Shown here: piece after piece, positions 41,801 to 64,000 of the stretch
Numbering within the stretch: the first letter of the stretch is position 1
Layout of the letters: the number at the start of each line of letters is the position of its first letter
DNA from: Macrostomum lignano
Lineage: Eukaryota
DNA: 64,000 nucleotides
Assembly (NCBI GenBank): GCA_002269645.1
Contig: NIVC01001589.1
Coordinates: forward strand, 16,259 to 80,258
Reading direction: 5' to 3'
The notes under the pieces: generated by a model
The model's input: the letters and a program-made list of their open reading frames with translations, nothing else
The model's database searches: none
Told to the model about the DNA's origin: nothing
Made by a program: the position numbers and the translations under genes

Positions 41801-43306
41801 ACTACAAGGTAAACACACACAAACTCACTGACTACAAGGTAAACACACACAAACTCACTGACTACAAGGTAAACACACACAAACTCACTGACTACAAGGT
41901 AAAACACACAAACTCACTGACTACAAGGTAAAACACACACAAACTCACTGACTACAAGGTAAACACACACAAACTCACTGACTACAAGGTAAACACATAC
42001 AAACTCACTGACTACAAGGTAAACACACACAAACTCACTGACTACAAGGTAAAACACACACAAACTCACTGACTACAAGGTAAACACACACAAACTCACT
42101 GACTACAAGGTAAACGCACACAAACTCACTGACTACAAGGTAAACACACACAAACTCACTGACTACAAGGTAAACGCACACAAACTCACTGACTACAAGG
42201 TAAACACACACAAACTCACTGACTACAAGGTAAACGCACACAAACTCACTGACTACAAGGTAAACACACACAAACTCACTGACTACAAGGTAAAACACAC
42301 ACAAACTCACTGACTACAAGGTAAACGCACACAAACTCACTGACTACAAGGTAAAACACACACAAACTCACTGACTACAAGGTAAACGCACACAAACTCA
42401 CTGACTACAAGGTAAACACACACAAACTCACTGACTACAAGGTAAACACACACAAACTCACTGACTACAAGGTAAAACACACACAAACTCACTGACTACA
42501 AGTTAAACACACACAAACTCACTGACTACAAGGTAAAACACACACAAACTCACTGACTACAAGGTAAACACACACAAACTCACTGACTACAAGGTAAACA
42601 CACACAAACTCACTGACTACAAGGTAAACACACACAAACTCACTGACTACAAGGTAAACACACACAAACTCACTGACTACAAGCTAAAACACACACAAAC
42701 TCACTGACTACAAGGTAAACACACACAAACTCACTGACTACAAGGTAAACACACACAAACTCACTGACTACAAGGTAAACACACACAAACTCACTGACTA
42801 CAAGGTAAACACACACAAACTCACTGACTACAAGGTAAAACACACACAAACTCACTGACTACAAGGTAAAGCGCACACAAACTCACTGACTACAAGGTAA
42901 ACACACACAAACTCACTGACTACAAGTAAAACACACACAAACTCACTGACTACAAGGTAAACACACACAAACTCACTGACTACAAGGTAAACACACACAA
43001 ACTCACTGACTACAAGGTAAACACACACAAACTCACTGACTACAAGCTAAAACACACACAAACTCACTGACTACAAGGTAAACACACACAAACTCACTGA
43101 CTACAAGGTAAACACACACAAACTCACTGACTACAAGGTAAAACACACAAACTCACTGACTACAAGGTAAAACACACACAAACTCACTGACTACAAGGTA
43201 AAACACACACAAACTCACTGACTACAAGGTAAACACACACAAACTCATTGACTACAAGGTAAACACACACAAACTCACTGACTACAAGGTAAAACACACA
43301 CAAACG
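29900..43306 (+). repeat. 30-bp satellite array, ~13 kb (>400 units), with degenerate edges
   Basis: Unit AACTCACTGACTACAAGGTAAACACACACA; apparently invariant from ~30860 to ~41290. Confidence 0.98.
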
Positions 43307-44064
43307 CATTGCCACGTCAGGTGGACGCGATTTACTATTCCAATAGCTTCTACCAATGTTCCTTCGTCTGCCGATCATCTGGTTCTACCAGACCTCCATG
43401 ACCATAAGCTGGAACCGTCTCAGAAAGCAGCTGTTTTCCTATCCGAACTCCTCCGGCATCTGTCGAGCGGAGACTCGGAACTTACGGTTACCGAGCTCGT
43501 GAGGAATAGAGAGGGGAGGAGGAGGAGGAAATGCGAGATGATTAGAGAGAGAAATGGAAATAAGAGGGGAGAGGAGAGACGAGAGCTGAGAAGAGACACA
43601 AACCCTGCGAGCGGGCCGGATTGCTATTGTGAAGGTTCAGAGGACCCGATGGCCGAATAGAGAGGCTTCGAGGGTCGGAGTTGGCCAATCCCTGGCTCCC
43701 TTCTCAGCTGTGAAAGGCTTTACATAGCGGAGGGTTAACATGGCTGCAATTGTCTATGACCAGACCTATTTTAGGTGCTATTTTTAGAACTCCATGGCCG
43801 TCGTGAACCAGGGACTTTTAGAAATAGCACCGCTGGACTGGAAGCCAGAATAAAGCTGGGGAGCAGAGCAGATCAGAACAAGTGAGGGGTGATTTTTAAC
43901 TGGCAGCAGGCTAGCGCATTCCACTGGATTGTTAAAATTATTTGCTTACTTGTAGTTTGAGTTGAATGTCGCGTTTAAAATGGAGCGTAAAATGGTGAGG
44001 CATGCAATCCTGTGGGCTGCATGGCGATCACGCACCAGCGGGTATTGATTTATCCTTTTTGATA

Positions 44065-44122
44065 CCCTTTCCTAGAAGGGGTTTCAAAAAAACAGGAAAA
44101 AATCCTTTCCACAGAAATCTTT
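44065..44122 (-). ncRNA. U5 snRNA 3' half, variant C (degenerate)
   Basis: Minus strand AAAGATTTCTGTGGAAAGG...GTTTTTTTG (Sm-like)...CCCCTTCTAGGAAAGGG hairpin. Confidence 0.65.
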
Positions 44123-44345
44123 GTTGTTAAAACGAGGTGCCGTAAAACTCGGCGCGGATCAGTTTCGAAGAACTCTGCCGCATTACATTTTTATTAAAAG
44201 GTGAATTTACAGGTGAATTCGATTCAGATATTAACGTATATTGTAGTAAAATTTTAATGAATCCGAAAAACTATTTTTAAATATTTGGCATTTTTCGTCG
44301 CCAAAAAAGAAGCGAGGCGAAAAATCCCTCACAGAGAAGGGATCC
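44123..44345 (-). mobile_element. Diverged 3'-end fragment of the same LINE family, joined to a U5 3' half at the same position
   Basis: GTTGTTAAAACGAGGTGCCG...GAAGAACTCTGCCGCA and downstream blocks (AAAACTATTTTT, AATCCC.CAC..AGAAGGGATC) align with the 3' UTR of the full copies, with many substitutions. Confidence 0.8.
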
Positions 44346-44392
44346 TCTGTGTACAAGAAATTGTGGAGTAATTACTTTTGATTTCATTAGTA

Positions 44393-44460
44393 CCCCTTCT
44401 TGGAAGGGGTTTCACAAATCAGGGAACACTCATTGAATGTTCCTCTCCACGGAAATCTTT
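44393..44460 (-). ncRNA. U5 snRNA 3' half, variant B
   Basis: Minus strand AAAGATTTCCGTGGAGAGGAACA (as in metazoan U5), GAACA/TGTTC stem, Sm-like GATTTGTG, CCCCTTC-CAA-GAAGGGG terminal hairpin. Confidence 0.85.
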
Positions 44461-45052
44461 GTTAAAACGAGGTGCCGTCGAAACCGGCGCGGGTCAGTTC
44501 CGAAGAACTCTGCCGCAGTTATATTTTGTATTTGATCGAAAGAATTAAAAATATTTACAAGATTTCGATTTGAATATTTATACGAATATTGAAATTAAAA
44601 ATATACATATATAAAACTTTTTTTCAATATTTTGCAGTATTTTGCACGCATTTGGGGATAAAAAAGAGGGGAGGGGAATCCCACACAAAGAAGGGATCTA
44701 ATAAAAACAGGACATCTAAAAAATACGTGCTGATATTTGAAGGCCTATTGAGAGTAAAAGCAAGACATTTAAGTAAAAAATAGAGATTAAAAATGCAATA
44801 GCGCATATTTGAATTTAGTTGTAAAAATAGAATGAATATAGTAAAGGTGTAAAAAAGCAATTAGTGATATTTGTAGAGCAGTTGGGTAAAAAACACAGTT
44901 GGGAAAATTGTAAAAAGAAACGCGAGGAGACATAGAGATTACCTAATCAGTCCTAATGACTGATCAACCGATCTCTGTCTCAGGCAGCAAGTTTAGTTTT
45001 ATTAGTTGCGTTTCAGAGCGTGGTCACTTCCGGTTTGGAGGCTGGTGCCAGC

Positions 45053-47826
45053 CTACCCTGGGTGGGATTCCCCTGTTTCTTTCCCGACGCCTCATGGCAT
45101 CCCAGAGGACATTGAGGACGGGGTTCGGCCCGGAGCCCGAGGGGCTTCCGGCTCAATGTGGAAGCTGTGGAGCTTGGCTGCCCTCATCTTGAGCAGCCAA
45201 GCCACCCCCAGCTGCTTGACCCTGTCTGCGAGCATCGGCATACCTGCCAGCTTGTGCAGGTATTCAATGCTGATGTAGGATGGCACACCATAGCAGATAC
45301 GGAGAGCCAGGTTTTGATTTTCTGCAATTTGATTTGGTTAGTCGCACAATTTGGCTCAGGATTGGCGCTCCGTAGGTGAGAGCGCTTTCTCCGTATGCCC
45401 TGTACAGCATTCTGAGGGTGGTGCTACTCAGCTTAGTCATTTTTGCAATTCTGCACAGTGACATTACAATGGCTCTGCTGGTATCTGCCATGTTGTCCAC
45501 ATGTTTGTTCAGGCAGAGGCTCTGGTCAAGGAGGACACCCAGGAATTTCACCTCCTGACAGTACGGAACCTCAGTGTCCCCCAGATACAGTTTGGGTCGC
45601 AAGTCCATGCGCCTAGTGGGTTTGTAGTTGAAAGCGATTGCTTTGCTTTTACCGGCATTCAGTCTAATGCCTTGTTTACCGCACCAGTCAAAGACTCGTC
45701 TGAGGTAGCTTTGAAGGGATGTTCGGAGCCCCGCAAAGGTGTCTGCTGAGGCCCAGACGGCCATGTCGTCTGCGAATTGACTGCGTTTGACGCTTGAGAT
45801 GGTGGGAGTCGGCATTGAGCTGACGAAGAGGAGTACAGGAGAGGACTCAGAATGCCTCCCTGAGGGACGCCAGCCTGGATGGTGTGGGGATCGCTTAGGG
45901 CCCCCTCGATTCGAACCTGGATCTGTCTGTCTCGCAGGTAGTCAGACAGGATTCGCATGAGCATAGGTGGAAAACCATCGGTGAGCATGCTATGCCTGAT
46001 CTTGTCGTGCCAGGTGGAGTCAAAAGCTGCCTCTGCATCCAGGAAGACTGCAGCGGACTTTTTAGCTTTGCACTTTGCTACCATGACATCTTGTGCCAGA
46101 CGGCACAGGTTGTCATACGTGGAGTGAATTTTGCGGTAGGCGCATTGGTCATCTCCTAGGGTCTTATTATCCTCAAGGTGCTTGGTGAGTCTTTTTGCTA
46201 TAAGCTTCTCAAACACTTTGCCCAGACATGAGGTCAGGCTGATTGGTCTGTAGGAGTTGGGGTGTTCGGGCGGTTTGTCCGGCTTGGGGATCATTGTCAC
46301 CACAGCTTTCTTCCAGGCGCTGGGGAAAATCCCTCGACCGTAGCAGGCGTTGAAGAGGTTAGTGAGTCTCGTGATTGCCACCCCCTCTAAGCCCAGCTTG
46401 AGGACGCAGTTGGGAATCTTGTCCAGCCCGGGTGCTCCATCAGGCCTGAGGTGCTCCAGTTCCCACACTGTGTCTGCCACAGAGAATGCAGCATCAAGTG
46501 GGTGGGTCTCAATGGGTTCGATTCCCTCAGGAACGGGGTAGAATGAGGTGAGCTGTGCCACATCGGCCACCTCACGTTTGAGCTGTTCGCATGTGGAAGG
46601 GACTGGGCGCATCTTTGAGTCCAGAGTCTCGGCTAGAAGGTTAGCCTTCTCCAGATCTGTGTGCGCAGTTGTTTGACCCAGGGTGAGGCTGGGGATCGAG
46701 GTTGGCTTAAATTTGCCCATCAGCTTTTTAGTGTCATGCCAGAAATTCTTCACTTTCTTGTTCTTGCTGTTTTCAACAATACTCTCACAGACTTTGGTGA
46801 GCTTTCCATTCTGGAAGGAGTTAATTTCTCTCTTTATGCGATTTGCGAGCTGGTTTGCTTGGGTTTTGAAATTTTGATCCCGTGTGCTGAAGAAGAGGCG
46901 TCTGAGTCGTCTGCGCTCTTTGATCAGGTCGAGGATGTACTTGGGTAGGGCGTTTTTGGCACCACAGTCTGGTACTGTGGAGTCAATCACGGTGTGAATG
47001 GCCTTTGTGATGTGATCCACTTCGGCATTGATTTGGTCAGCATTTGATAATTTAATATTCTGATCTGAGCTCAAAGCTTCACTGATTTTGAGTCTGAACT
47101 CGTCCCAGTTTGTTTTTGAGAAGTTTTTGGGTCTGGGGGGACCAGCCCATTTCTTCGACTGAATATTGAGCGTGAGGATTATGGGTAAGTGGTCACTGCC
47201 CAGGTCAGGACCCACCTCAAAGTCCTGCACAAATGGGAGAAAGTCCTCAGTGGCCAGGGCGAGGTCCAAGACATTCCTAGAAATCAGCCCGTTTTTGGTG
47301 GCCAGTCTGGTGAACTGACCGGCTTGATTGAGAATGGTGGCGAGGTGGGGCCCTCAGACAGCCAGTCGTGCAGCTGGTAGCCAGCCATGTTGTTGCTGCT
47401 GTCACCCCCGAGGAAGCGGTGTCTGGCATTGAGGTCACCCATGAGCACACTGCGCCTACGGGAGAGAAGATTTTTGAGTAGGTTCAGGTTCAGATGATAC
47501 GGTGCTGGAGACCTGTACACCAGAGCAAGATTGAAGTCAGGACCAGAGTTGTCAGACAAGCTCACGGTGCAAGAGATGGCTTCATGGTTGACATTGTCAT
47601 ACTGCAAGCGCACATTTGTGAGTTTGACGCGAGGAGAGTGGGCAAGGAGAAGCCCGCGTTTGACTTGCGGGGTATCATACCGAATGATGGAGTACCCGGG
47701 AATCTGGACAGTGTGACAACTTTTGAGAATGGTCTCAGAGAAGAGGGCAATGTCTAGCTCCTGACTGACGACCCACTGTGTCAGCTCTCTGATTTTCGGG
47801 TTGAATCCCCTGCAGTTTAAATGCAT
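45053..47826 (-). pseudogene. ORF2 (APE endonuclease + RT), copy 1, several frameshifts
   Basis: MHLNCRG, FSET, YRSP, GDLNARH, GSDHLP; YRPISLTSCLGK, FLDAEAAFD, GVPQG, QFADD. Confidence 0.9.
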
Positions 47827-47912
47827 AATCTTCAGGGCTGTGGTTTGATTGTTTGAGTCTACAGTTAACGCACTGAAGTTTCAATTCAAGTCTTGAGTTT
47901 AGCTGCCTGAGA

Positions 47913-50616
47913 CTAGGACTCAGTGGTCATGCCAGCCATGCCCGGCACTTCCTGGAGTGCAGCCCGCACAATGTCCTCAACCATTTTACTGGTTGATTCC
48001 ACAGTGAGGACCTCCCCAGGCGGTCGGGACAGGGCCTGCACAACCACTTGAGTCAGAGAGCGGGTGATCAGGGGCAACAGCATGCTCACCACCGACATAA
48101 AGTCACTAAGCTGCAGCTGCACCGCCTGGCCGGCATCAGCTGACGGAGCAGTCGCATTGACATCAGACTCGGTCTCTGCCGCCGGAGCGCTCCTGGCATC
48201 ATCGGTCACGATGACAAGCGGCCGGATCGCGGCGGGTACCGGCACCGTGCGCCTGCCTCGGCGGATCAGCCAGCCGCTGTCGGAGTCGTCGTCGGCGGCG
48301 GCGTCGTCGGTCTCACTTGACACTGGGGCAGCAGCGGCCGCAGCTTCCGCAGCTCGCGCCGCGGCTTTGGCCTCAGCAGCCGCTCTGGTCGCCTTGTCGT
48401 GCTCCGCCTTGGCGACGGTGCAGGCTCGACTGGTGGTTCGGTGCGAGCCGCCGCAGTTGGCGCAGACCGCTGGGCCCTCGTGCTGGCACTCCTTCCAGGA
48501 ATGCTGGCCGCCGCAAATCCGGCAGCGCTGCTGCCCCCGACACTGGCAGCGCGGTGGCCGAACTCCTGGCAGCGCTGGCATTGCAGAGCGCGGACCGGCT
48601 CGTCTGTGCGGCTGTCCTCGCAGTTGAACTTCAAGAAGTCGGTGCAGATGCCATCGCGGAGGCACTTCTCGTAGGTCATCGCCGACTTTGTGAAGATGCG
48701 CACGAACTGGGTTGCCTTCCCAGTCGCTCTGGCTCGGATTCTGTGGACGCTGACAATGTCCAGCTTGAGCGTGTCGCGCAACAGGGTCGCGAAGTCAGCC
48801 TCCGAGAATGCGAGGGGCACCTCAGTAGCGACGAAGGTGCGTACCGGCTGCTGCTGCACTCTGTCGGGCCCTGTTCTGTTGTCCAGCGGTCGGGCTCGGG
48901 CTGGACGGCGCTTTACGGGATGCTCGAGCAGCTTCTCCTCGCGCAGCGCGCCGCCCAGGAAGACGTTGTAGTCCCGCTCCGACGCTGGGAACACGAGATA
49001 GGCCGGCTGATTCGCCATCGGCGCAGTGTTGACGGCTCTAGCTTCGCCGGCAAAGTTGGTCTGCAGCCAGGCAACGAACTGCATCAGCTTGTTGGCCGCG
49101 TCCCGGTGCACCTCAAAAACGATCGGCGGGATGGCAGCCTGGGGCCTTCTGGGCGGCGCAGGGCGCGCCGCAACCTGCGCGTAGGGCCGCGCTGCCGCAG
49201 CCGCCTGCGCGCTTGTCGCCGAAGCCGCCGCCGCACCGGCCGGCCAGGAAGCCGCCGAAGCCGCCGCCGCACCGGACGCCGCGCCGCGACCTCCTCGCCT
49301 GCCTCGCTGGTGGCCGCCACGGCCGCGCCGACCCCGATCGCCTTCGCGGTCTCGCGTCGCCGTCGCCTGCCGCTCCTGGGGCCTGTCGTCGCCCCGGCCG
49401 CCCTGGTCGTCGTCGTGGCCGCCTTGGTCGTCGTCCCGACCGCCTTGGTCGTCGCCGAATGGGCCGCCGTTTAGCGGCTGGCTGTAGGTCGGGTCATCCG
49501 GCAGAGCTCGCTTGCGCCGCAGCTCCGGCTTGGTGACACGGAATGTTAGCGAGATGCGGACGCCATTCTGAGAGTGGGCGGCGGGCACCTGGTGCTGCAG
49601 GCGTTTCTGGCAGTTTCCTGCCATCAGAATCAGCGAGCCTGGCAGCGTTGGAAAGCGGTGCGTCACGTTGCCGTCCCGACGGCGCAGCATGAACAGCCGC
49701 TCAGCGCCGAAGGACACGGTCGCGATCGTCGGCCTGTCGCCGAGCTCATCCTCATCGTCCGAGTGCCAGGGAATCCGGTCTCCCGGCTCGGTGTAGAAGT
49801 TCACCAACACGGAGTTGAACTTCGGGACATCGAACTGGGTATCATGGTAAATGAAGTCACGAATGTCTTCAATTACCTGATGCCAGTCTAGATTTTCCTT
49901 CAGCTCAACCCCGCTGTAGGTGTACGACGGGCCGATCCAGTAGACGCGGCGCTGCTCACTCGGACGATGCTGAAAGGCTTGAGGCAGCAGGTCGGTGATC
50001 AGGCGCTCGTAGACTTGGTCCGCGACCTCGCTCAGGAACTTGGGCGCATAGATGATGGTGCTGTCGCTGGCGTAGATCGTCTGCTGACAGTCAGTCAAGT
50101 CAGGCTCATCAGGGAAGATGATTTGACTGATGTCAGCGTCCAGTTGCTCGGCAGGGGCTTTGGCAGCGTCGAGGCCTGGTCTGCAGCCGATTGCTGGCGC
50201 TCCTCAGACGTCGGCGCTGCCGCTGCCGCACTGAGCTCGCTGGACTCGGCAGTTGGTGGCTCGGTGGTTGCTGCGGCCTCGTTGGATGGCAGGGCGCTTG
50301 TCTGGCCTGGCTCGTCGCAGTCGAGAGACATGCGCTGCTCTGCCTCTGCGCCTGCAGCCTCCGGCAGCTGCTCATTCTCTCGCAGGATCTCCTCTGCGTT
50401 GCGCAAGAGCTCGCCGGCCGGTGGGCTGATCGAGTGGCGGCCTTCCAGACTGCGTCGAGCTCGCATCTGGCCTGCTGGCGGCGGGCTCGCAGTCAATGGC
50501 TCAGCTGTCGGCGTCAGTCCAAGAAGCTGGCGACCGTAGGCTTCGTTCGGACGATACCGGTGCTCGAGAGAGGGCCGGCAGTCCATCTTTTTAGCGCTGG
50601 CGCGATTTGCAGCCAT
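47913..50616 (-). pseudogene. ORF1 (AlkB domain 49535-50065 + gag-like region + 3 CCHC knuckles), copy 1, frameshifts near 50155 and 48545
   Basis: YTYSG, NFY, HSD, HQVP, RISLTFR; knuckles CQRCQEFGH, CRICGGQHSWKEC, CANCGGSHRTTSRAC. Confidence 0.88.
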
Positions 50617-50834
50617 ATGGCGTGATTATTTGGGTGCACTCACACTAAACTAAACTAGACAACTACTAATGAGTCAGGAGGCACACAAAGTGCGCTCGCT
50701 GAGAGGGGTGGGGCGACTGCAAGATAAGACTAGGGGTGGGGTAGAGATAAAAACAAATGTACAGTGGAATGGAAGGCTAACTAAAGTACTTTAAGAGCTA
50801 AGCTAGGCTAGTCTAAACTATTCTATTTCTAATA

Positions 50835-50902
50835 AGCCTTTCTAGGAAAGGCCTGCAAAAACTAGAGAATTCTCCTAAGAGTATCCCTCCACGGAAATCT
50901 TT
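50835..50902 (-). ncRNA. U5 snRNA 3' half, variant A, carried at the 5' end of copy 1
   Basis: AAAGATTTCCGTGGAGGGATAC...AGTTTTTG (Sm)...GCCTTTCCTAGAAAGGC; near-identical to 63740-63806. Confidence 0.85.
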
Positions 50903-51502
50903 GTTGTTAAAACGAGGTGCCGTCGAAACCGGCGCGGGTCAGTTCCGAAGAACTCTGCCGCAGTTATATTTTGTATTTGATCGAAAGAATTAAAAATATT
51001 TACAAGATTTCGATTTGAATATTTAATACGAATATTGAAATTAAAAATATACATATATAAAACTATTTTTCAATATTTTGCAGTATTTTGCACGCATTTG
51101 GGGATAAAAAAGAGGGGAGGGAAATCCCACACAAAGAAGGGATCTAATAAAAACAGGACATCTAAAAAATACGTGCTGATATTTGAAGGCCTATTGAGAG
51201 TAAAAGCAAGACATTTAAGTAAAAAAAATAGAGATTAAAAATGCAATAGCGCATATTTGAATTTAGTTGTAAAAATAGAATGAATATAGTAAAGGTGTAA
51301 AAAAGCAATTAGTGATATTTGTAGAGCAGTTGGGTAAAAAACACAGTTGGGAAAATTGTAAAAAGAAACGCGAGGAGACATAGAGATTACCTAATCAGTC
51401 CTAATGACTGATCAACCGATCTCTGTCTCAGGCAGCAAGTTTAGTTTTATTAGTTGCGTTTCAGAGCGTGGTCACTTCCGGTTTGGAAGGCTGGTAGCCA
51501 GC

Positions 51503-54282: not shown

Positions 54283-54368
54283 AATCTTCAGGGCTGTGGT
54301 TTGATTGTTTGAGTCTACAGTTAACGCACTGAAGTTTCAATTCAAGTCTTGAGTTTAGCTGCCTGAGA

Positions 54369-57071
54369 CTAGGACTCAGTGGTCATGCCAGCCATGCCCG
54401 GCACTTCCTGGAGTGCAGCCCGCACAATGTCCTCAACCATTTTACTGGTTGATTCCACAGTGAGGACCTCCCCAGGCGGTCGGGACAGGGCCTGCACAAC
54501 CACTTGAGTCAGAGAGCGGGTGATCAGGGGCAACAGCATGCTCACCACCGACATAAAGTCACTAAGCTGCAGCTGCACCGCCTGGCCGGCATCAGCTGAC
54601 GGAGCAGTCGCATTGACATCAGACTCGGTCTCTGCCGCCGGAGCGCTCCTGGCATCATCGGTCACGATGACAAGCGGCCGGATCGCGGCGGGTACCGGCA
54701 CCGTGCGCCTGCCTCGGCGGATCAGCCAGCCGCTGTCGGAGTCGTCGTCGGCGGCGGCGTCGTCGGTCTCACTTGACACTGGGGCAGCAGCGGCCGCAGC
54801 TTCCGCAGCTCGCGCCGCGGCTTTGGCCTCAGCAGCCGCTCTGGTCGCCTTGTCGTGCTCCGCCTTGGCGACGGTGCAGGCTCGACTGGTGGTTCGGTGC
54901 GAGCCGCCGCAGTTGGCGCAGACCGCTGGGCCCTCGTGCTGGCACTCCTTCCAGGAATGCTGGCCGCCGCAAATCCGGCAGCGCTGCTGCCCCCGACACT
55001 GGCAGCGCGGTGGCCGAACTCCTGGCAGCGCTGGCATTGCAGAGCGCGGACCGGCTCGTCTGTGCGGCTGTCCTCGCAGTTGAACTTCAAGAAGTCGGTG
55101 CAGATGCCATCGCGGAGGCACTTCTCGTAGGTCATCGCCGACTTTGTGAAGATGCGCACGAACTGGGTTGCCTTCCCAGTCGCTCTGGCTCGGATTCTGT
55201 GGACGCTGACAATGTCCAGCTTGAGCGTGCGCGCAACAGGGTCGCGAAGTCAGCCTCCGAGAATGCGAGGGGCACCTCAGTAGCGACGAAGGTGCGTACC
55301 GGCTGCTGCTGCACTCTGTCGGGCCCTGTTCTGTTGTCCAGCGGTCGGGCTCGGGCTGGACGGCGCTTTACGGGATGCTCGAGCAGCTTCTCCTCGCGCA
55401 GCGCGCCGCCCAGGAAGACGTTGTAGTCCCGCTCCGACGCTGGGAACACGAGATAGGCCGGCTGATTCGCCATCGGCGCAGTGTTGACGGCTCTAGCTTC
55501 GCCGGCAAAGTTGGTCTGCAGCCAGGCAACGAACTGCATCAGCTTGTTGGCCGCGTCCCGGTGCACCTCAAAAACGATCGGCGGGATGGCAGCCTGGGGC
55601 CTTCTGGGCGGCGCAGGGCGCGCCGCAACCTGCGCGTAGGGCCGCGCTGCCGCAGCCGCCTGCGCGCTTGTCGCCGAAGCCGCCGCCGCACCGGCCGGCC
55701 AGGAAGCCGCCGAAGCCGCCGCCGCACCGGACGCCGCGCCGCGACCTCCTCGCCTGCCTCGCTGGTGGCCGCCACGGCCGCGCCGACCCCGATCGCCTTC
55801 GCGGTCTCGCGTCGCCGTCGCCTGCCGCTCCTGGGGCCTGTCGTCGCCCCGGCCGCCCTGGTCGTCGTCGTGGCCGCCTTGGTCGTCGTCCCGACCGCCT
55901 TGGTCGTCGCCGAATGGGCCGCCGTTTAGCGGCTGGCTGTAGGTCGGGTCATCCGGCAGAGCTCGCTTGCGCCGCAGCTCCGGCTTGGTGACACGGAATG
56001 TTAGCGAGATGCGGACGCCATTCTGAGAGTGGGCGGCGGGCACCTGGTGCTGCAGGCGTTTCTGGCAGTTTCCTGCCATCAGAATCAGCGAGCCTGGCAG
56101 CGTTGGAAAGCGGTGCGTCACGTTGCCGTCCCGACGGCGCAGCATGAACAGCCGCTCAGCGCCGAAGGACACGGTCGCGATCGTCGGCCTGTCGCCGAGC
56201 TCATCCTCATCGTCCGAGTGCCAGGGAATCCGGTCTCCCGGCTCGGTGTAGAAGTTCACCAACACGGAGTTGAACTTCGGGACATCGAACTGGGTATCAT
56301 GGTAAATGAAGTCACGAATGTCTTCAATTACCTGATGCCAGTTAGATTTTCCTTCAGCTCAACCCCGCTGTAGGTGTACGACGGGCCGATCCAGTAGACG
56401 CGGCGCTGCTCACTCGGACGATGCTGAAAGGCTTGAGGCAGCAGGTCGGTGATCAGGCGCTCGTAGACTTGGTCCGCGACCTCGCTCAGGAACTTGGGCG
56501 CATAGATGATGGTGCTGTCGCTGGCGTAGATCGTCTGCTGACAGTCAGTCAAGTCAGGCTCATCAGGGAAGATGATTTGACTGATGTCAGCGTCCAGTTG
56601 CTCGGCAGGGGGCTTTGGCAGCGTCGAGGCCTGGTCTGCAGCCGATTGCTGGCGCTCCTCAGACGTCGGCGCTGCCGCTGCCGCACTGAGCTCGCTGGAC
56701 TCGGCAGTTGGTGGCTCGGTGGTTGCTGCGGCCTCGTTGGATGGCAGGGCGCTTGTCTGGCCTGGCTCGTCGCAGTCGAGAGACATGCGCTGCTCTGCCT
56801 CTGCGCCTGCAGCCTCCGGCAGCTGCTCATTCTCTCGCAGGATCTCCTCTGCGTTGCGCAAGAGCTCGCCGGCCGGTGGGCTGATCGAGTGGCGGCCTTC
56901 CAGACTGCGTCGAGCTCGCATCTGGCCTGCTGGCGGCGGGCTCGCAGTCAATGGCTCAGCTGTCGGCGTCAGTCCAAGAAGCTGGCGACCGTAGGCTTCG
57001 TTCGGACGATACCGGTGCTCGAGAGAGGGCCGGCAGTCCATCTTTTTAGCGCTGGCGCGATTTGCAGCCAT
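54369..57071 (-). pseudogene. ORF1 (AlkB + gag knuckles), copy 2, frameshifts near 56342, 55229 and 55000
   Basis: Same motifs as copy 1, split across track ORFs. Confidence 0.85.
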
Positions 57072-57286
57072 ATGGCGTGATTATTTGGGTGCACTCAACT
57101 AAACTAAACTACAACTACTAATGAGTCAGGAGGCACACAAAGTGCGCTCGCTGAGAGGGGTGGGGCGACTGCAAGATAAGACTAGGGGTGGGGTAGAGAT
57201 AAAAACAAATGTACAGTGGAATGGAAGGCTAACTAAAGTACTTTTAAGAGCTAAGCTAGGCTAGTCTAAACTATTCAACTTCAATA

Positions 57287-57354
57287 AGCCTTTCTAGGAA
57301 AGGCCTGCAAAAACTAGAGAATTCTCCTAAGAGTATCCCTCCACGGAAATCTTT
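57287..57354 (-). ncRNA. U5 snRNA 3' half, variant A, carried at the 5' end of copy 2
   Basis: Same sequence as 50835-50902. Confidence 0.85.
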
Positions 57355-57952
57355 GTTGTTAAAACGAGGTGCCGTCGAAACCGGCGCGGGTCAGTTCCGA
57401 AGAACTCTGCCGCAGTTATATTTTGTATTTGATCGAAAGAATTAAAAATATTTACAAGATTTCGATTTGAATATTTAATACGAATATTGAAATTAAAAAT
57501 ATACATATATAAAACTATTTTTCAATATTTTGCAGTATTTTGCACGCATTTGGGGATAAAAAAGAGGGGAGGGAAATCCCGCACAAAGAAGGGATCTAAT
57601 AAAAACAGGACATCTAAAAAATACGTGCTAGATATTTGAAGGCCTATTGAGAATAAAAGCAAGACATTTAAGTAAAAAAAAGAGATTAAAATGCAATAGC
57701 GCATATTTGAATTTAGTTGTAAAAATAGAATGAATATAGTAAAGGTGTAAAAAAGCAATTAGTGATATTTGTAGAGCAGTTGGGTAAAAAACACAGTTGG
57801 GAAAATTGTAAAAAGAAACGCGAGGAGACATAGAGATTACCTAATCAGTCCTAATGACTGATCAACCGATCTCTGTCTCAGGCAGCAAGTTTAGTTTTAT
57901 TAGTTGCGTTTCAGAGCGTGGTCACTTCCGGTTTGGAAGGCTGGTAGCCAGC

Positions 57953-60731
57953 CTAACCCTGGGGTGGGAATCCCCTGTTTCTTTCCCGACGCCTCATGGC
58001 ATCCCAGAGGACATTGAGGACAGGGGTTCGGCCCGGAGCCCGAGGGGCTTCCGGCTCAATGTGGAAGCTGTGGAGCTTGGCTGCCCTCATCTTGAGCAGC
58101 CAAGCCACCCCCAGCTGCTTGACCCTGTCTGCGAGCATCGGCATACCTGCCAGCTTGTGCAGGTATTCAATGCTGATGTAGGATGGCACACCATAGCAGA
58201 TACGGAGAGCCAGGTTTTGAATTTTCTGCAATTTGATTTGGTTAGTCGCACAGATTTGGCTCAGGATTGGCGCTCCGTAGGTGAGAGCGCTTTCTCCGTA
58301 TGCCCTGTACAGCATTCTGAGGGTGGTGCTACTCAGCTTAGTCATTTTTGCAATTCTGCACAGTGACATTACAATGGCTCTGCTGGTATCTGCCATGTTG
58401 TCCACATGTTTGTTCAGGCAGAGGCTCTGGTCAAGGAGGACACCCAGGAATTTCACCTCCTGACAGTACGGAACCTCAGTGTCCCCCAGATACAGTTTGG
58501 GTCGCAAGTCCATGCGCCTAGTGGGTTTGTAGTTGAAAGCGATTGCTTTGCTTTTACCGGCATTCAGTCTAATGCCTTGTTTACCGCACCAGTCAAAGAC
58601 TCGTCTGAGGTAGCTTTGAAGGGATGTTCGGAGCCCCGCAAAGGTGTCTGCTGAGGCCCAGACGGCCATGTCGTCTGCGAATTGACTGCGTTTGACGCTT
58701 GAGATGGTGGGAGTCGGCATTGAGCTGACGAAGAGGAGGTACAGGAGAGGGCTCAGAATGCCTCCCTGAGGGACGCCAGCCTGGATGGTGTGGGGATCGC
58801 TTAGGGCCCCCTCGATTCGAACCTGGATCTGTCTGTCTCGCAGGTAGTCAGACAGGATTCGCATGAGCATAGGTGGAAAACCATCGGTGAGCATGCTATG
58901 CCTGATCTTGTCGTGCCAGGTGGAGTCAAAAGCTGCCTCTGCATCCAGGAAGACTGCAGCGGACTTTTTAGCTTTGCACTTTGCTACCATGACATCTTGT
59001 GCCAGACGGCACAGGTTGTCATACGTGGAGTGAATTTTGCGGTAGGCGCATTGGTCATCTCCTAGGGTCTTATTATCCTCAAGGTGCTTGGTGAGTCTTT
59101 TTGCTATAAGCTTCTCAAACACTTTGCCCAGACATGAGGTCAGGCTGATTGGTCTGTAGGAGTTGGGGTGTTCGGGCGGTTTGTCCGGCTTGGGGATCAT
59201 TGTCACCACAGCTTTCTTCCAGGCGCTGGGGAAAATCCCTCGACCGTAGCAGGCGTTGAAGAGGTTAGTGAGTCTCGTGATTGCCACCCCCTCTAAGCCC
59301 AGCTTGAGGACGCAGTTGGGAATCTTGTCCAGCCCGGGTGCTCCATCAGGCCTGAGGTGCTCCAGTTCCCACACTGTGTCTGCCACAGAGAATGCAGCAT
59401 CAAGTGGGTGGGTCTCGATGGGTTCGATTCCCTCAGGAACGGGGTAGAATGAGGTGAGCTGTGCCACATCGGCCACCTCACGTTTGAGCTGTTCGCATGT
59501 GGAAGGGACTGGGCGCATCTTTGAGTCCAGAGTCTCGGCTAGAAGGTTAGCCTTCTCCAGATCTGTGTGCGCAGTTGTTTGACCCAGGGTGAGGCTGGGG
59601 ATCGAGGTTGGCTTAAATTTGCCCATCAGCTTTTTAGTGTCATGCCAGAAATTCTTCACTTTCTTGTTCTTGCTGTTTTCAACAATACTCTCACAGACTT
59701 TGGTGAGCTTTCCATTCTGGAAGGAGTTAATTTCTCTCTTTATGCGATTTGCGAGCTGGTTTGCTTGGGTTTTGAAATTTTGATCCCGTGTGCTGAAGAA
59801 GAGGCGTCTGAGTCGTCTGCGCTCTTTGATCAGGTCGAGGATGTACTTGGGTAGGGCGTTTTTGGCACCACAGTCTGGTACTGTGGAGTCAATCACGGTG
59901 TGAATGGCCTTTGTGATGTGATCCACTTCGGCATTGATTTGGTCAGCATTTGATAATTTAATATTCTGATCTGAGCTCAAAGCTTCACTGATTTTGAGTC
60001 TGAACTCGTCCCAGTTTGTTTTTGAGAAGTTTTTGGGTCTGGGGGGACCAGCCCATTTCTTCGACTGAATATTGAGCGTGAGGATTATAGGTAAGTGGTC
60101 ACTGCCCAGGTCAGGACCCACCTCAAAGTCTGCACAAATGGGAGAAAGTCCTCAGTGGCCAGGGCGAGGTCCAAGACATTCCTAGAAATCAGCCCGTTTT
60201 TGGTGGCCAGTCTGGTGAACTGACCGGCTTGATTGAGAATGGTGGGCGAGGTGGGGCCCTCAGACAGCCAGTCGTGCAGCTGGTAGCCAGCCATGTTGTT
60301 GCTGCTGTCACCCCGAGGAAGCGGTGTCTGGCATTGAGGTCACCCATGAGCACACTGCGCCTACGAGAGAGAAGATTTTTGAGTAGGTTCAGGTTCAGAT
60401 GGTACGGTGCTGGAGACCTGTACACCAGAGCGAGATTGAAGTCAGGACCAGAGTTGTCAGACAAGCTCACGGTGCAAGAGATGGCTTCATGGTTGACATT
60501 GTCATACTGCAAGCGCACATTTGTGAGTTTGACGCGAGGAGAGTGGGCAAGGAGAAGCCCGCGTTTGACTTGCGGGGTATCATACCGAATGATGGAGTAC
60601 CCGGGAATCTGGACAGTGTGACAACTTTTGAGAATGGTCTCAGAAAAGAGGGCAATGTCTAGCTCCTGACTGACGACCCACTGTGTCAGCTCTCTGATTT
60701 TCGGGTTGAATCCCCTGCAGTTTAAATGCAT
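57953..60731 (-). pseudogene. ORF2 (APE + RT), copy 3, frameshifts near 60310 and 60128
   Basis: 722-aa intact RT portion plus APE in neighbouring frames. Confidence 0.88.
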
Positions 60732-60817
60732 AATCTTCAGGGCTGTGGTTTGATTGTTTGAGTCTACAGTTAACGCACTGAAGTTTCAATTCAAGTCTTG
60801 AGTTTAGCTGCCTGAGA

Positions 60818-63520
60818 CTAGGACTCAGTGGTCATGCCAGCCATGCCCGGCACTTCCTGGAGTGCAGCCCGCACAATGTCCTCAACCATTTTACTGGTTG
60901 ATTCCACAGTGAGGACCTCCCCAGGCGGTCGGGACAGGGCCTGCACAACCACTTGAGTCAGAGAGCGGGTGATCAGGGGCAACAGCATGCTCACCACCGA
61001 CATAAAGTCACTAAGCTGCAGCTGCACCGCCTGGCCGGCATCAGCTGACGGAGCAGTCGCATTGACATCAGACTCGGTCTCTGCCGCCGGAGCGCTCCTG
61101 GCATCATCGGTCACGATGACAAGCGGCCGGATCGCGGCGGGTACCGGCACCGTGCGCCTGCCTCGGCGGATCAGCCAGCCGCTGTCGGAGTCGTCGTCGG
61201 CGGCGGCGTCGTCGGTCTCACTTGACACTGGGGCAGCAGCGGCCGCAGCTTCCGCAGCTCGCGCCGCGGCTTTGGCCTCAGCAGCCGCTCTGGTCGCCTT
61301 GTCGTGCTCCGCCTTGGCGACGGTGCAGGCTCGACTGGTGGTTCGGTGCGAGCCGCCGCAGTTGGCGCAGACCGCTGGGCCCTCGTGCTGGCACTCCTTC
61401 CAGGAATGCTGGCCGCCGCAAATCCGGCAGCGCTGCTGCCCCGACACTGGCAGCGCGGTGGCCGAACTCCTGGCAGCGCTGGCATTGCAGAGCGCGGACC
61501 GGCTCGTCTGTGCGGCTGTCCTCGCAGTTGAACTTCAAGAAGTCGGTGCAGATGCCATCGCGGAGGCACTTCTCGTAGGTCATCGCCGACTTTGTGAAGA
61601 TGCGCACGAACTGGGTTGCCTTCCCAGTCGCTCTGGCTCGGATTCTGTGGACGCTGACAATGTCCAGCTTGAGCGTGCGCGCAACAGGGTCGCGAAGTCA
61701 GCCTCCGAGAATGCGAGGGGCACCTCAGTAGCGACGAAGGTGCGTACCGGCTGCTGCTGCACTCTGTCGGGCCCTGTTCTGTTGTCCAGCGGTCGGGCTC
61801 GGGCTGGACGGCGCTTTACGGGATGCTCGAGCAGCTTCTCCTCGCGCAGCGCGCCGCCCAGGAAGACGTTGTAGTCCCGCTCCGACGCTGGGAACACGAG
61901 ATAGGCCGGCTGATTCGCCATCGGCGCAGTGTTGACGGCTCTAGCTTCGCCGGCAAAGTTGGTCTGCAGCCAGGCAACGAACTGCATCAGCTTGTTGGCC
62001 GCGTCCCGGTGCACCTCAAAAACGATCGGCGGGATGGCAGCCTGGGGCCTTCTGGGCGGCGCAGGGCGCGCCGCAACCTGCGCGTAGGGCCGCGCTGCCG
62101 CAGCCGCCTGCGCGCTTGTCGCCGAAGCCGCCGCCGCACCGGCCGGCCAGGAAGCCGCCGAAGCCGCCGCCGCACCGGACGCCGCGCCGCGACCTCCTCG
62201 CCTGCCTCGCTGGTGGCCGCCACGGCCGCGCCGACCCCGATCGCCTTCGCGGTCTCGCGTCGCCGTCGCCTGCCGCTCCTGGGGCCTGTCGTCGCCCCGG
62301 CCGCCCTGGTCGTCGTCGTGGCCGCCTTGGTCGTCGTCCCGACCGCCTTGGTCGTCGCCGAATGGGCCGCCGTTTAGCGGCTGGCTGTAGGTCGGGTCAT
62401 CCGGCAGAGCTCGCTTGCGCCGCAGCTCCGGCTTGGTGACACGGAATGTTAGCGAGATGCGGACGCCATTCTGAGAGTGGGCGGCGGGCACCTGGTGCTG
62501 CAGGCGTTTCTGGCAGTTTCCTGCCATCAGAATCAGCGAGCCTGGCAGCGTTGGAAAGCGGTGCGTCACGTTGCCGTCCCGACGGCGCAGCATGAACAGC
62601 CGCTCAGCGCCGAAGGACACGGTCGCGATCGTCGGCCTGTCGCCGAGCTCATCCTCATCGTCCGAGTGCCAGGGAATCCGGTCTCCCGGCTCGGTGTAGA
62701 AGTTCACCAACACGGAGTTGAACTTCGGGACATCGAACTGGGTATCATGGTAAATGAAGTCACGAATGTCTTCAATTACCTGATGCCAGTCTAGATTTTC
62801 CTTCAGCTCAACCCCGCTGTAGGTGTACGACGGGCCGATCCAGTAGACGCGGCGCTGCTCACTCGGACGATGCTGAAAGGCTTGAGGCAGCAGGTCGGTG
62901 ATCAGGCGCTCGTAGACTTGGTCCGCGACCTCGCTCAGGAACTTGGGCGCATAGATGATGGTGCTGTCGCTGGCGTAGATCGTCTGCTGACAGTCAGTCA
63001 AGTCAGGCTCATCAGGGAAGATGATTTGACTGATGTCAGCGTCCAGTTGCTCGGCAGGGGGCTTTGGCAGCGTCGAGGCCTGGTCTGCAGCCGATTGCTG
63101 GCGCTCCTCAGACGTCGGCGCTGCCGCTGCCGCACTGAGCTCGCTGGACTCGGCAGTTGGTGGCTCGGTGGTTGCTGCGGCCTCGTTGGATGGCAGGGCG
63201 CTTGTCTGGCCTGGCTCGTCGCAGTCGAGAGACATGCGCTGCTCTGCCTCTGCGCCTGCAGCCTCCGGCAGCTGCTCATTCTCTCGCAGGATCTCCTCTG
63301 CGTTGCGCAAGAGCTCGCCGGCCGGTGGGCTGATCGAGTGGCGGCCTTCCAGACTGCGTCGAGCTCGCATCAGGCCTGCTGGCGGCGGGCTCGCAGTCGA
63401 TGGCTCAGCTGTCGGCGTCAGTCCAAGAAGCTGGCGACCGTAGGCTTCGTTCGGACGATACCGGTGCTCGAGAGAGGGCCGGCAGTCCATCTTTTTAGCG
63501 CTGGCGCGATTTGCAGCCAT
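60818..63520 (-). CDS. ORF1, copy 3: open for 646 aa through the AlkB domain (62438-62968); frameshifts near 61678 and 61445 before and within the knuckles
   Basis: MAANRASAKK...; N273-x-Y275, H285-x-D287, H342, R354, R360. Confidence 0.88.
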
Positions 63521-63739
63521 ATGGCGTGATTATTTGGGTACACTCAAACTAAACCTAAACTACAACTAACTAATGAGTCAGGAGGCACACAAAGTGCGCT
63601 CGCTGAGAGGGGTGGGGCGACTGCAAGATAAGACTAGGGGTGGGGTAGAGATAAAAACAAATGTACAGTGGAATGGAAGGCTAACTAAAGTACTTTCAAG
63701 AGCTAAGCTAGGCTAGTCTAAACTATTCAACTTCCAATA

Positions 63740-63851
63740 AGCCTTTCTAGGAAAGGCCTGCAAAAACTAGAGAATTCTCCTAAAGTATCCCTCCACGGAA
63801 ATCTTTAGTAAAAGGCGAAAGATTTAATCGTGGAATGAAGAAACCAGAGCT
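63740..63851 (-). ncRNA. RNU5: Complete U5 spliceosomal snRNA gene (~112 nt), formed from the host 5' half and the element-carried 3' half
   Basis: Minus strand AGCTCTGGTTTCTTCATTCCACGATTAAATCTTTC GCCTTTTAC TAAAGATTTCCGTGGAGGGATAC...AGTTTTTG CAGGCCTTTCCTAGAAAGGC: invariant loop I, AAATCTTT/AAAGATTT stem, Sm site and 3' hairpin. The core is identical to the recalled metazoan U5 segment AAAUCUUUCGCCUUUUACUAAAGAUUUCCGUGGAG. Confidence 0.95.
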
Positions 63852-64000
63852 GGGATTGTAGAAGGATAGCTTAGATTATATAGAAATATTTTCTACAGCC
63901 TGAATGAAACCTTCGTTTTCGTAAAGCAATTATTAAAAAAGCATTGAAGATTTTAAAGGCAGTTTTTAACATCTCCGAACAATTAATGTGACTAATTCAA

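What the first reader, a model, noticed from the sequence alone, without database searches (positions are those of the whole stretch)
44065..63851. Non-LTR retrotransposon that targets the U5 snRNA gene and rebuilds it on insertion
Seen in sequence: all four element 3' ends (44123, 44461, 50903, 57355) read ...CACCTCGTTTTAAC(AAC)|AAAGATTT on the minus strand, joined to U5 right after loop I. Each full copy starts with a ~68-nt U5 3' half (stem strand, Sm site, terminal hairpin). At the 5'-most junction this half follows the U5 5' half (63807-63851) and gives a full-length U5. Established: site-specific LINEs target multicopy RNA genes (R1/R2 in 28S, NeSL in SL RNA, Keno and Utopia in U2), and phage/ICE attP sites restore tRNA genes on integration. 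Inference: this APE-type LINE cuts U5 at loop I and carries the missing half, so insertion spares an essential gene. I do not know a described U5-specific, gene-restoring APE LINE, but cannot check the literature here.
Basis: partly seen in the sequence, partly recalled or inferred. Interest (0 to 1): 0.95.

Follow-up and report, generated by a model that had tools for sequence, protein, structure and literature searches.

The report
LINE that targets and regenerates U5
A jumping gene of the flatworm Macrostomum lignano inserts at one fixed nucleotide of the U5 spliceosomal RNA gene and is always headed by its own copy of the gene's back half, so an intact-looking U5 gene remains at the head of three of the four insertion arrays found.

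Summary
The window, from Macrostomum lignano, holds a full-length U5 snRNA gene (Rfam RF00020, 78 bits). Behind it lie three 6.45-kb copies of an APE+RT non-LTR retrotransposon and one old 240-nt fragment. Each is joined by its 3' end (...CACCTCGTTTTAAC, plus 0-1 AAC) to U5 nucleotide 46.

I found three more arrays of the same element in the public assembly, all at paralogous U5 loci. All 13 3' junctions lie at the same U5 position.

It is 94-95 nt: U5 nt 46-112 plus about 26 nt of the gene's 3' flank. Its sequence variants travel with the element between loci. In two loci it sits in front of an element whose downstream neighbour is a different (B-type) U5 half. So the head is most likely carried in the RNA, probably a read-through transcript from the U5 promoter.

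A long (about 95-bp) target duplication remains a serious rival, and it best explains two old truncated copies. U5 function and genome-wide specificity are untested.

A U5-targeting Tx1 family is already listed in the literature, so the target is not new. I found no description of the gene-regenerating head. ORF1 carries an ALKBH3-like AlkB domain.

The parts
63740..63851 (-). Full-length U5 snRNA gene, made of resident nt 1-45 plus the element-associated nt 46-112
   Evidence: RF00020 78.4 bits, model positions 1-117. The same structure scores 83.8 and 83.5 bits in L004 and L006.
63807..63851 (-). Resident U5 5' half (nt 1-45, through loop I ...CGCCTTTTACT)
   Evidence: The upstream flank is paralogous between loci.
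63713..63806 (-). U5-derived head of copy E1: U5 nt 46-112 plus 26 nt of U5 gene 3' flank (variant v1)
   Evidence: The boundary is defined by the resident flank of locus N (L011 16046-16140).
57358..63712 (-). Copy E1 body: 5'UTR, ORF1 (ATG at 63520), ORF2, 3'UTR
62395..62830 (-). ALKBH3-like AlkB (2OG-Fe(II) dioxygenase) domain in ORF1 of E1 (approximate limits)
   Evidence: PF13532; human ALKBH3 E=8e-24; also present in relative L001
57355..57357 (-). AAC tail unit at the E1 3' junction
57261..57354 (-). U5-derived head of copy E2 (variant v1')
50906..57260 (-). Copy E2 body. ORF1 pieces at 56328-57071, 55132-56265 and 54369-55121. ORF2 at 51503-54340 (945 aa, APE+RT). 3'UTR at 50906-51502, with two terminal stem-loops.
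50903..50905 (-). AAC tail unit at the E2 3' junction
50808..50902 (-). U5-derived head of copy E3 (variant v2, shared with copies in L005 and L006)
44461..50807 (-). Copy E3 body (v2 lineage); its 3' end joins the B-type half with no AAC
44366..44460 (-). B-type U5 3' half plus 25-nt flank (95 nt). About 99% identical to L006 12115-12209. Probably the half that was in the gene before E3 arrived.
44126..44365 (-). E4: old 5'-truncated copy of a diverged subfamily (last ~240 nt, roughly 80% identical to the 3'UTR of E1-E3)
44123..44125 (-). AAC tail unit at the E4 3' junction
44040..44122 (-). C-type decayed U5 3' half plus flank, the oldest remnant; unique DNA follows

Best explanation
This is a U5-gene-specific APE+RT non-LTR retrotransposon of Macrostomum lignano.

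Shown:
- Its endonuclease site is fixed. Reverse transcription always starts at the bottom-strand position opposite U5 nt 45/46, leaving ...TTTTAAC(AAC)0-2 joined to AAAGATTTCCGTGG.
- Every full-length copy is headed by 94-95 nt of U5-gene sequence: nt 46-112 (stem strand, Sm site, 3' hairpin) plus about 26 nt of the gene's 3' flank.
- This head moves with the element from locus to locus.

Inferred:
- The template RNA is a read-through or co-transcript that starts in or upstream of the U5 part, most simply from the U5 promoter of the regenerated gene.
- After first-strand synthesis, the cDNA copy of the head anneals to the U5 sequence left on the upstream side of the break. At least the 14 nt AAAGATTTCCGTGG are kept there in one truncated insertion.
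- Second-strand synthesis then seals a seamless junction.

The result is promoter + resident nt 1-45(-59) + element-borne nt 46(60)-112 + 3' flank, which is a complete U5 gene and a fresh target. Arrays then grow by repeated insertion at the head. In two of the three arrays where this could be judged, the older copies lie downstream. The head itself probably arose once, from a long target duplication or from read-through at an A-type U5 gene such as locus N.
For: Site specificity: 13 of 13 3' junctions, in the window, L004+L011, L005 and L006, lie at U5 45/46. The tail varies (none, AAC, AACAAC, AACAAA), which argues for separate TPRT events. The loci are paralogues. Their upstream flanks are 96% (L005/L006) and 80-96% (L004/L005) identical, while the element copies differ by at most 1.2%.

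The head is carried:
- In the window and in L006, an A-type head precedes a v2-lineage copy whose downstream neighbour is a B-type half.
- Head variant v2 (columns 77 and 79) co-occurs with internal SNPs at columns 3414, 3444 and 4432 in copies at three loci.
- Head variants differ within a single array (v1, v1', v2; v2, v3), which one target duplication cannot give.
- The 577-nt truncated copy in L005 follows U5 nt 1-59 plus an 8-nt filler. Only 14 bp are duplicated there and no head is present.

Not a local duplication: the two copies in L006 are the most divergent pair apart from the old copy N_Ed, at 42 differences in 4,345 positions.

Regenerated gene: full-length RF00020 hits of 78-84 bits at three array heads. 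The 5' half plus the A-type half folds into the canonical long stem with a 3' hairpin.

Precedent: co-transcription with the target RNA gene helps the 5' joining of R1/R2-type elements (cited in PMC4494074; PMC2718515 listed).
Against: Two old 5'-truncated copies (E4, 240 nt; E4' in L006, 27 nt) sit directly behind a complete B-type half plus 25 nt. A simple 'head is part of the full-length RNA' model does not predict this. It needs internal-deletion derivatives, or a second mechanism.

The U5-derived segment has the same length (94-95 nt) in the A and B types and ends at the homologous flank position. This looks like a fixed top-strand cut.

In locus N, all heads and the resident half differ by at most one change in the junction-variant region (v1, v1', v4), so that array is equally well explained by a long target duplication.

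The window and locus N share two nearly identical copies, so array recombination or allelism blurs the count of independent events.

No transcript data, no genome-wide survey and no evidence of U5 function were available. Many 1-nt indels, likely assembly errors (the window differs from L004 by about 0.17%, almost all 1-nt indels, against 2 substitutions in E1), make ORF integrity unknowable.
Confidence: 0.6

Rival explanations
1. Long target-site duplication. The endonuclease nicks the bottom strand at U5 45/46 and the top strand about 95 nt downstream, 25-26 nt past the U5 3' end. Every insertion, whatever its length, therefore leaves a complete U5 plus 3' flank upstream and a duplicate 3' half downstream. 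The head is target DNA and is not carried by the RNA. Differences between heads arise later, by gene conversion or concerted evolution of the live U5 copy.
For: The U5-derived segment ends at the same homologous position, with the same length (94-95 nt), in front of full-length copies, the 240-nt E4 and the 27-nt E4'. In locus N the resident half and all heads are the same type and differ by at most one change in the junction-variant region (v1, v1', v4). The C and D halves look like decayed relatives of B, as expected for old duplicates. An exceptionally long TSD is documented for R9 (reference in PMC5035012).
Against: A duplication cannot place an A-type head in front of a copy whose downstream half is B-type, as seen in the window and L006. 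Neither can it place different head variants on the two sides of one young copy. The head variants are linked to the element's internal SNPs across loci. The truncated copy in L005 duplicates only 14 bp.
Confidence: 0.2
2. Template jump in trans. After copying the element RNA, fully or partly, the reverse transcriptase jumps to the 3' end of a 3'-extended pre-U5 RNA and copies it back to about nt 46. Homology with the target then closes the junction. This is the route that makes U6/L1 and U5/L1 chimeras.
For: It explains U5 heads in front of truncated copies (E4, E4') that have an identical end point. Template switching onto snRNAs, U5 included, is documented for L1 (PMC4476161).
Against: The head includes about 26 nt of gene flank that is absent from mature U5. 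Identical head/5'UTR junction variants recur at different loci and are linked to internal SNPs, so the junction is inherited and not re-made at each event. The human U5/L1 chimeras carry 3'-truncated U5 segments, unlike the situation here.
Confidence: 0.08
3. One or a few ancient insertions were spread by DNA-level processes: segmental duplication of the U5 region, unequal crossing-over within arrays, and gene conversion between paralogous U5 loci. There is no ongoing site-specific retrotransposition.
For: The four loci are paralogous. The window and locus N share two nearly identical copies plus the upstream flank. N_Eb, N_Ec and W_E2 differ by only 1-2 substitutions.
Against: The elements (at most 1.2% diverged) are much younger than the flanks (4-20% diverged). 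The 3' tails differ at otherwise homologous junctions: no AAC in the window against one AAC in L006, both before the B-type half. There are 5'-truncated copies of different lengths at the same site. Copies within L006 are more divergent from each other than from copies elsewhere. Older subfamily fragments at the same U5 position show repeated use of the site over time.
Confidence: 0.07

Closest known systems
Keno and other Tx1-clade target-specific LINEs, including the Tx1 family listed with target 'U5 snRNA' in Kojima 2015 (PMC4494074, Fig. 3 legend)
   Same: They are APE-type LINEs that insert at one site of a Pol II snRNA gene. Targeting of U5 itself has already been catalogued for a Tx1 family.
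   Different: Clade membership was not shown here. No Cys-His motif follows the RT, ORF1 has CCHC knuckles, and the endonuclease's best (weak) PDB match is TRAS1, not L1. No published description that I could find mentions a carried target half or gene regeneration. The name and host of the Tx1 U5 family could not be retrieved.
Utopia (U2 snRNA gene-specific, restriction-like endonuclease; PMC4640811)
   Same: It is specific to an snRNA gene, has low copy number, forms occasional tandem insertions, and several lineages are maintained within a small gene family.
   Different: Utopia has a C-terminal RLE and a single ORF, and it leaves disrupted U2 genes that lack their 5' 38 bp. The element here has an APE and leaves an intact-looking gene.
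R2/R1 in 28S rDNA, which use co-transcripts
   Same: They depend on the target gene's transcription. Target-derived sequence at the 5' end of the template RNA guides 5' junction formation (cited; PMC2718515).
   Different: R1 and R2 inactivate the rDNA unit they enter. Here the RNA-borne target sequence is the part downstream of the nick, and it rebuilds the gene.
R9 of bdelloid rotifers (exceptionally long TSD; Gladyshev & Arkhipova 2009, reference seen). From memory: SLACS/CZAR in trypanosome SL genes, with a TSD of about 49 bp.
   Same: They are site-specific LINEs that duplicate a long stretch of the target RNA gene.
   Different: In those cases the duplicates are target DNA on both sides. 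Here the upstream copy can differ in type from the downstream one.
U6/L1 and U5/L1 chimeric retrogenes (PMC4476161)
   Same: snRNA sequence is fused to the 5' end of LINE sequence, including truncated LINE copies.
   Different: Those chimeras are dispersed, use mature (or 3'-truncated) snRNA, and form anew at each event. Here the head includes gene flank, is inherited, and always lies at a U5 gene.
Integrative elements and phages whose attP carries the 3' part of a tRNA gene
   Same: The mobile element supplies a replacement for the gene segment it displaces, so the target gene stays whole.
   Different: Those use DNA recombinases in prokaryotes. This is TPRT in an animal.

Membership tests
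Site-specific APE-type non-LTR retrotransposon | ORF2 with an N-terminal AP-like endonuclease followed by a reverse transcriptase | tested here: met
   PF14529 (E=2.8e-11) and PF00078 (E=1.7e-36) in window 51503-54340 (-)
Site-specific APE-type non-LTR retrotransposon | The 3' junction lies at the same target nucleotide in independent insertions | tested here: met
   13 of 13 junctions at U5 45/46 in four arrays at paralogous loci, with varying AAC tails
Site-specific APE-type non-LTR retrotransposon | TPRT hallmarks: 5'-truncated copies and a variable short 3' tail | tested here: met
   Truncated copies of 577 nt (L005), 240 nt (E4) and 27 nt (E4'); tail of 0-2 AAC units, or AACAAA
Site-specific APE-type non-LTR retrotransposon | Copies absent, or rare, outside the target across the whole genome | not testable with these tools
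   The M. lignano genome could not be searched by DNA. Only the loci that carry annotated ORF1 proteins (three contigs) were reachable, and all of them are U5 loci.
Tx1 clade (Keno; the Tx1 family with a U5 target) | RT groups within Tx1 in a phylogeny with reference clades | not tested
   No Repbase reference sequences were available. PDB matches (R2, L1 RT) do not discriminate.
Tx1 clade (Keno; the Tx1 family with a U5 target) | Cys-His motif C-terminal to the RT, as in L1/Tx1 ORF2 (feature recalled from my own knowledge) | tested here: not met
   The ORF2 translation ends about 160 aa after the RT with no CxxC/His cluster. The endonuclease's best PDB hit is TRAS1 (R1 clade), E=0.011, and L1 EN is not hit.
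R2/NeSL/Utopia (RLE-type site-specific LINEs) | Single ORF with a restriction-like endonuclease C-terminal to the RT | tested here: not met
   Two ORFs; an APE domain N-terminal to the RT; no C-terminal domain
snRNA/LINE chimeric retrogene (template switch) | The snRNA part corresponds to the RNA itself, with no gene flank, and each junction is made anew | tested here: not met
   The head includes about 26 nt that match the resident 3' flank of the U5 gene at locus N. Junction variants are shared between loci.
Long-TSD site-specific LINE (R9-like) | Identical target segments on both sides of an insertion | tested here: inconclusive
   Met in locus N (v4/v4). Not met for W_E3 and L006_Ef (A-type upstream, B-type downstream) or for W_E2 (v1' against v2).
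U5 spliceosomal RNA gene (RF00020) | Full-length covariance-model match above the gathering score, with loop I, Sm site and 3' hairpin | tested here: met
   78.4, 83.8 and 83.5 bits against a gathering score of 40; canonical fold
U5 spliceosomal RNA gene (RF00020) | Expressed and assembled into snRNP | not testable with these tools
   No RNA data were available

The most novel reading that the evidence does not exclude
The element and the U5 gene family are interlocked in three ways. First, the working U5 genes of M. lignano get their 3' halves and 3'-end signals from the retrotransposon, which overwrites the resident half at each insertion (A replacing B). The element thereby acts as the vehicle of concerted evolution of U5. 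Second, the element in turn relies on U5-promoter read-through for its template RNA. Third, insertion is close to gene-neutral by design. This would be an animal retrotransposon counterpart of tRNA-restoring integrative elements.
Probability: 0.3. Interest if true: 0.85.

Novelty: new variant of a known kind. Interest (0 to 1): 0.66.

Why it matters
Site-specific LINEs are usually thought to survive by hitting redundant genes and inactivating the copy they enter. U5 is a low-copy, essential Pol II snRNA gene. An element that leaves a complete U5 at each insertion would show a different solution to the cost of insertion.

It would also give a natural example in which RNA-borne target homology directs the poorly understood 5' (second-strand) joining step of TPRT. 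That step is of direct interest for LINE-based targeted gene insertion.

Finally, it raises the question of whether a retrotransposon can homogenise part of a host RNA gene family. The ALKBH3-like domain in ORF1 is a separate lead on nucleic-acid demethylation in a LINE RNP.

Tried and rejected
1. Relatives in other data. ORF2 has only three close homologues (46-59% identity: L001-L003). Their contigs show no U5 motif. L002 has 2.4 kb after the stop codon without one. The UTRs are not alignable.
2. More distant relatives (about 30% identity, L007-L010) are ordinary poly(A)-tailed LINEs with unrelated flanks and no U5. U5 targeting is therefore not a property of the wider lineage.
3. A metagenome scan for TTTTAAC-N0-9-AAAGATTTCCGTGG gave two chance hits in GC-rich sequence with no U5.
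4. A search with the CCHC part of ORF1 found nothing.
5. Half-U5 copies are not detected by Rfam even at E<=1, so halves had to be found by pattern.
6. Model 'unit = element + downstream half, inserted after the U5 3' end'. Rejected because the AAC-tail heterogeneity lies between the element and the downstream half, and because the truncated copy in L005 sits at U5 nt 59.
7. Template switch to mature U5 snRNA. Rejected because the head contains gene flank.
8. Clade assignment by PDB matches was uninformative.
9. The name of the Tx1 family with a U5 target could not be recovered, because no supplement is held.
10. My first impression of a 'hypervariable filler' after the U5 3' end was toned down. 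The variants differ by only 1-3 changes and are shared between loci.


Full report
**What is in the window.**
An Rfam scan finds one gene-quality hit: a full-length U5 snRNA at 63851..63740 on the minus strand, 78.4 bits against a gathering score of 40. The element 3' end CACCTCGTTTTAAC occurs four times on the minus strand, where 0.03 matches are expected by chance. Each occurrence is followed by no AAC or one AAC and then AAAGATTTC[C/T]GTGG, which is U5 from nucleotide 46 onward.

Three units of 6,445-6,452 bp (E1 57358-63806, E2 50906-57357, E3 44461-50905) differ by 5-19 substitutions plus many 1-nt indels. The most upstream unit abuts U5 nt 1-45 and completes the gene. ORF2 has AP-endonuclease and RT domains.

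**Source organism.**
ORF1 matches annotated proteins of Macrostomum lignano, assembly GCA_002269645.1. The window resembles contig NIVC01002892.1 at 99.8% over the first two copies. The differences are almost all 1-nt indels, so the frameshifts that break the ORFs cannot be trusted either way. Downstream of the second copy the window and that contig differ in structure. I therefore treat the contig as a separate array, called N.

**More arrays.**
The ORF1 protein clusters led to two further contigs (L005, L006) and to the rest of N (L004, L011). Their structures are as follows.
- Window: promoter-U5(1-45)-[A head]E1-AAC-[A]E2-AAC-[A]E3-[B half+25 nt]-E4(240 nt)-AAC-[C half]-unique DNA.
- N: promoter-U5(1-45)-[A]Ea-AAC-[A]Eb-AAC-[A]Ec-AAC-[A]Ed-AACAAC-[A half+26 nt]-unique DNA.
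- L005: promoter-U5(1-59)-TGATTTCC-577-nt truncated copy-AACAAA-[A]Ec-AAC-[A]Ed...
- L006: promoter-U5(1-45)-[A]Ee (internally deleted)-[A]Ef-AAC-[B half+25 nt]-E4'(27 nt)-AAT-[D half]-other DNA.

All 13 3' junctions are at U5 45/46. Full-length U5 hits of 83.8 and 83.5 bits head N and L006. In L005 the head gene is broken by the truncated copy.

The loci are paralogues. Upstream flanks are 96% identical between L005 and L006, and 80-96% identical over about 8 kb between L004 and L005. The element copies differ by at most 1.2%. So the elements entered after the loci diverged, and did so at the same nucleotide each time.

**What the U5-derived head really is.**
In N, the last element is followed by an A-type half plus ATTAGAAGTTGAATAGTTTAGACTAG, and then by unrelated DNA. 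Every full-length copy has the same 26 nt, with 1-3 variant positions, between the U5 3' hairpin and its own 5'UTR (CCTAGCTTAGC...).

The head is therefore U5 nt 46-112 plus about 26 nt of U5-gene 3' flank, 94-95 nt in all. It derives from a gene or a primary transcript, not from mature snRNA. The B-type segment is also 95 nt long and ends at the homologous flank position.

**Is the head carried, or is it a target duplication?**
Evidence that it is carried:
- In the window and in L006, an A-type head precedes a copy whose downstream neighbour is a B-type half. A and B differ throughout after GTGGAG.
- Head variant v2 (AGAAATAGAATAG) occurs at three loci. It is linked there to internal substitutions at alignment columns 3414, 3444 and 4432.
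- Heads on the two sides of one young copy differ: v1' against v2 for E2, and v2 against v3 in L005.
- The truncated copy in L005 follows U5 nt 59 plus an 8-nt filler, so only AAAGATTTCCGTGG is duplicated.

Evidence for a long (about 95-bp) duplication:
- The U5 segment ends at one fixed position in front of full-length copies, the 240-nt E4 and the 27-nt E4'.
- The segment has equal length in the A and B types.
- Array N is internally uniform.

I conclude that the head now travels with the element, at a confidence of about 0.6. It probably originated from a long duplication or from read-through at an A-type U5 gene. E4 and E4' remain unexplained under the carry model, unless they are internally deleted head+tail derivatives.

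**Arrays grow by insertion, not only by DNA duplication.**
The two copies in L006 are the most divergent pair apart from the old copy N_Ed, at 42 differences in 4,345 positions. L006_Ef differs from window E3 by 28 in 6,310. The 3' tails differ at otherwise equivalent junctions: there is no AAC before the B half in the window, but one AAC in L006.

In the window and in N the most downstream copies carry the most private substitutions (E3 has 4; N_Ed has 35). That is expected if each new copy enters the regenerated gene at the head of the array. Some local duplication or recombination is nevertheless likely, because N_Eb, N_Ec and W_E2 differ by only 1-2 substitutions.

**Mechanism proposed.**
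The endonuclease nicks the bottom strand opposite U5 45/46, and TPRT starts on the 3' end of the RNA. That 3' end has two conserved terminal stem-loops, which are also kept in E4.

The template is a transcript that includes the U5 head, most simply read-through from the U5 promoter. The cDNA of the head anneals to the U5 sequence kept on the upstream side, and second-strand synthesis yields a seamless U5. This parallels the use of co-transcribed target sequence by R1 and R2 (PMC2718515). The difference is that here the borrowed sequence lies downstream of the nick and so rebuilds the gene. The 5' half plus the A head folds as a canonical U5. Whether it is functional is not shown.

**Literature.**
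Utopia and Keno (U2) and Dada (U1, U6) are the snRNA-gene specialists discussed in the papers I could read. However, the Fig. 3 legend of Kojima 2015 lists 'U5, U5 snRNA' as the target of a Tx1 family. A U5-targeting APE LINE is therefore not new in itself.

I found no description of a LINE that regenerates its snRNA target. Mutsu and Utopia are described as disrupting theirs. Nothing relevant turned up on M. lignano.

The element's clade is unassigned. It has no Cys-His motif after the RT, it has CCHC knuckles in ORF1, and its endonuclease is weakly closest to TRAS1. These features argue against Tx1 but do not prove it.

**Limits.**
The whole genome could not be searched, so 'only in U5' rests on four arrays. 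These were reached through annotated ORF1 proteins on three contigs plus the window. The relatives in other datasets either lack informative ends or are ordinary poly(A) LINEs. A metagenome pattern scan gave only chance hits.

**Side finding.**
ORF1 contains an AlkB-type dioxygenase domain (PF13532) that is closest to human ALKBH3 (E=8e-24). By my reading of the translation, the HxD, H and RxxxxxR motifs are present. The domain is conserved in relative L001. It also occurs in several long proteins in public data, one of which also has a CCHC knuckle. I found no paper describing AlkB in a LINE.

Noticed in passing
window ~62395-62830 (-) in E1; equivalent positions in E2 and E3; L001 2-300: ORF1 of the LINE carries an AlkB-type 2OG-Fe(II) dioxygenase domain (PF13532) closest to human ALKBH3 (E=8e-24), with the catalytic HxD/H/RxxxxxR motifs present. 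An RRM-like region and CCHC knuckles follow it. The domain is conserved in a relative with 56% ORF2 identity, and similar AlkB-containing long proteins (700-960 aa, one of them with zf-CCHC) exist in public data. No LINE with AlkB was found in the searchable literature; only an orchid Ty3/Gypsy case turned up.
   Followed up: partly
window ~63621-63660 (-), 5'UTR of each copy: A strong polypyrimidine tract plus AG (tttgtttttatctctaccccacccctagtcttatcttgcag) lies about 90 nt after the U5 head. It could be a (trans-)splice acceptor that would give a capped, head-less mRNA from a U5-promoter read-through transcript.
   Followed up: no
window 44366-44460 and 44126-44365 (-); L006 12115-12236: Two old 5'-truncated element fragments (240 nt and 27 nt, different subfamilies) both start exactly 25 nt after a near-identical B-type U5 half. 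No single model explains this together with the A/B discordance around the young copies.
   Followed up: partly
window 30456-43305: A 12.8-kb satellite of a 30-bp unit (AAACTCACTGACTACAAGGTAAACACACAC; 428 copies, 99% matches) lies about 750 bp beyond the end of the array. Locus N has a different satellite beyond its array.
   Followed up: no
window 15786-20659 (+): A NOP56/58-like gene (NOP5NT exon at 15786-16463, Nop exon at 20129-20659) holds a 3.5-kb array of a 35-bp repeat (16461-19979, 97 copies) between these exons. A 29-bp repeat (14536-15685) lies just upstream.
   Followed up: no
window 1300-3700 (-): A DIRS-like retrotransposon fragment: RVT_1 (2130-2870) and a tyrosine recombinase (Phage_integrase, 1310-1705).
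   Followed up: no
window 5223-11195 (+) and 28724-29702 (+): Host genes: an eRF3/HBS1-like GTPase (PAM2 exon at 5223-5645, GTP_EFTU exon at 10563-11195) and a Branch-type (core-2/I) glycosyltransferase.
   Followed up: no
window 44461-64000 compared with L004/L011 (NIVC01002892.1): The window is 99.8% identical to the public contig over the U5 gene and the first two copies, the differences being almost all 1-nt indels. It then has a different third copy and a different array end. It is either another haplotype or homeologue, or a recombinant array. The indel rate makes the ORF frameshifts unreliable.
   Followed up: partly
window 50906-50965 (-) and 44126-44190 (-): The element 3' end folds into two stem-loops (GCGG...AGUUC-UUCG-GAACU...CCGC and GCCG-N7-CGGC) that are kept in the diverged E4 fragment. 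The last 12 nt (CTCGTTTTAAC) resemble U5 loop I (TCGCCTTTTACT), so each element/half junction mimics the target site.
   Followed up: partly
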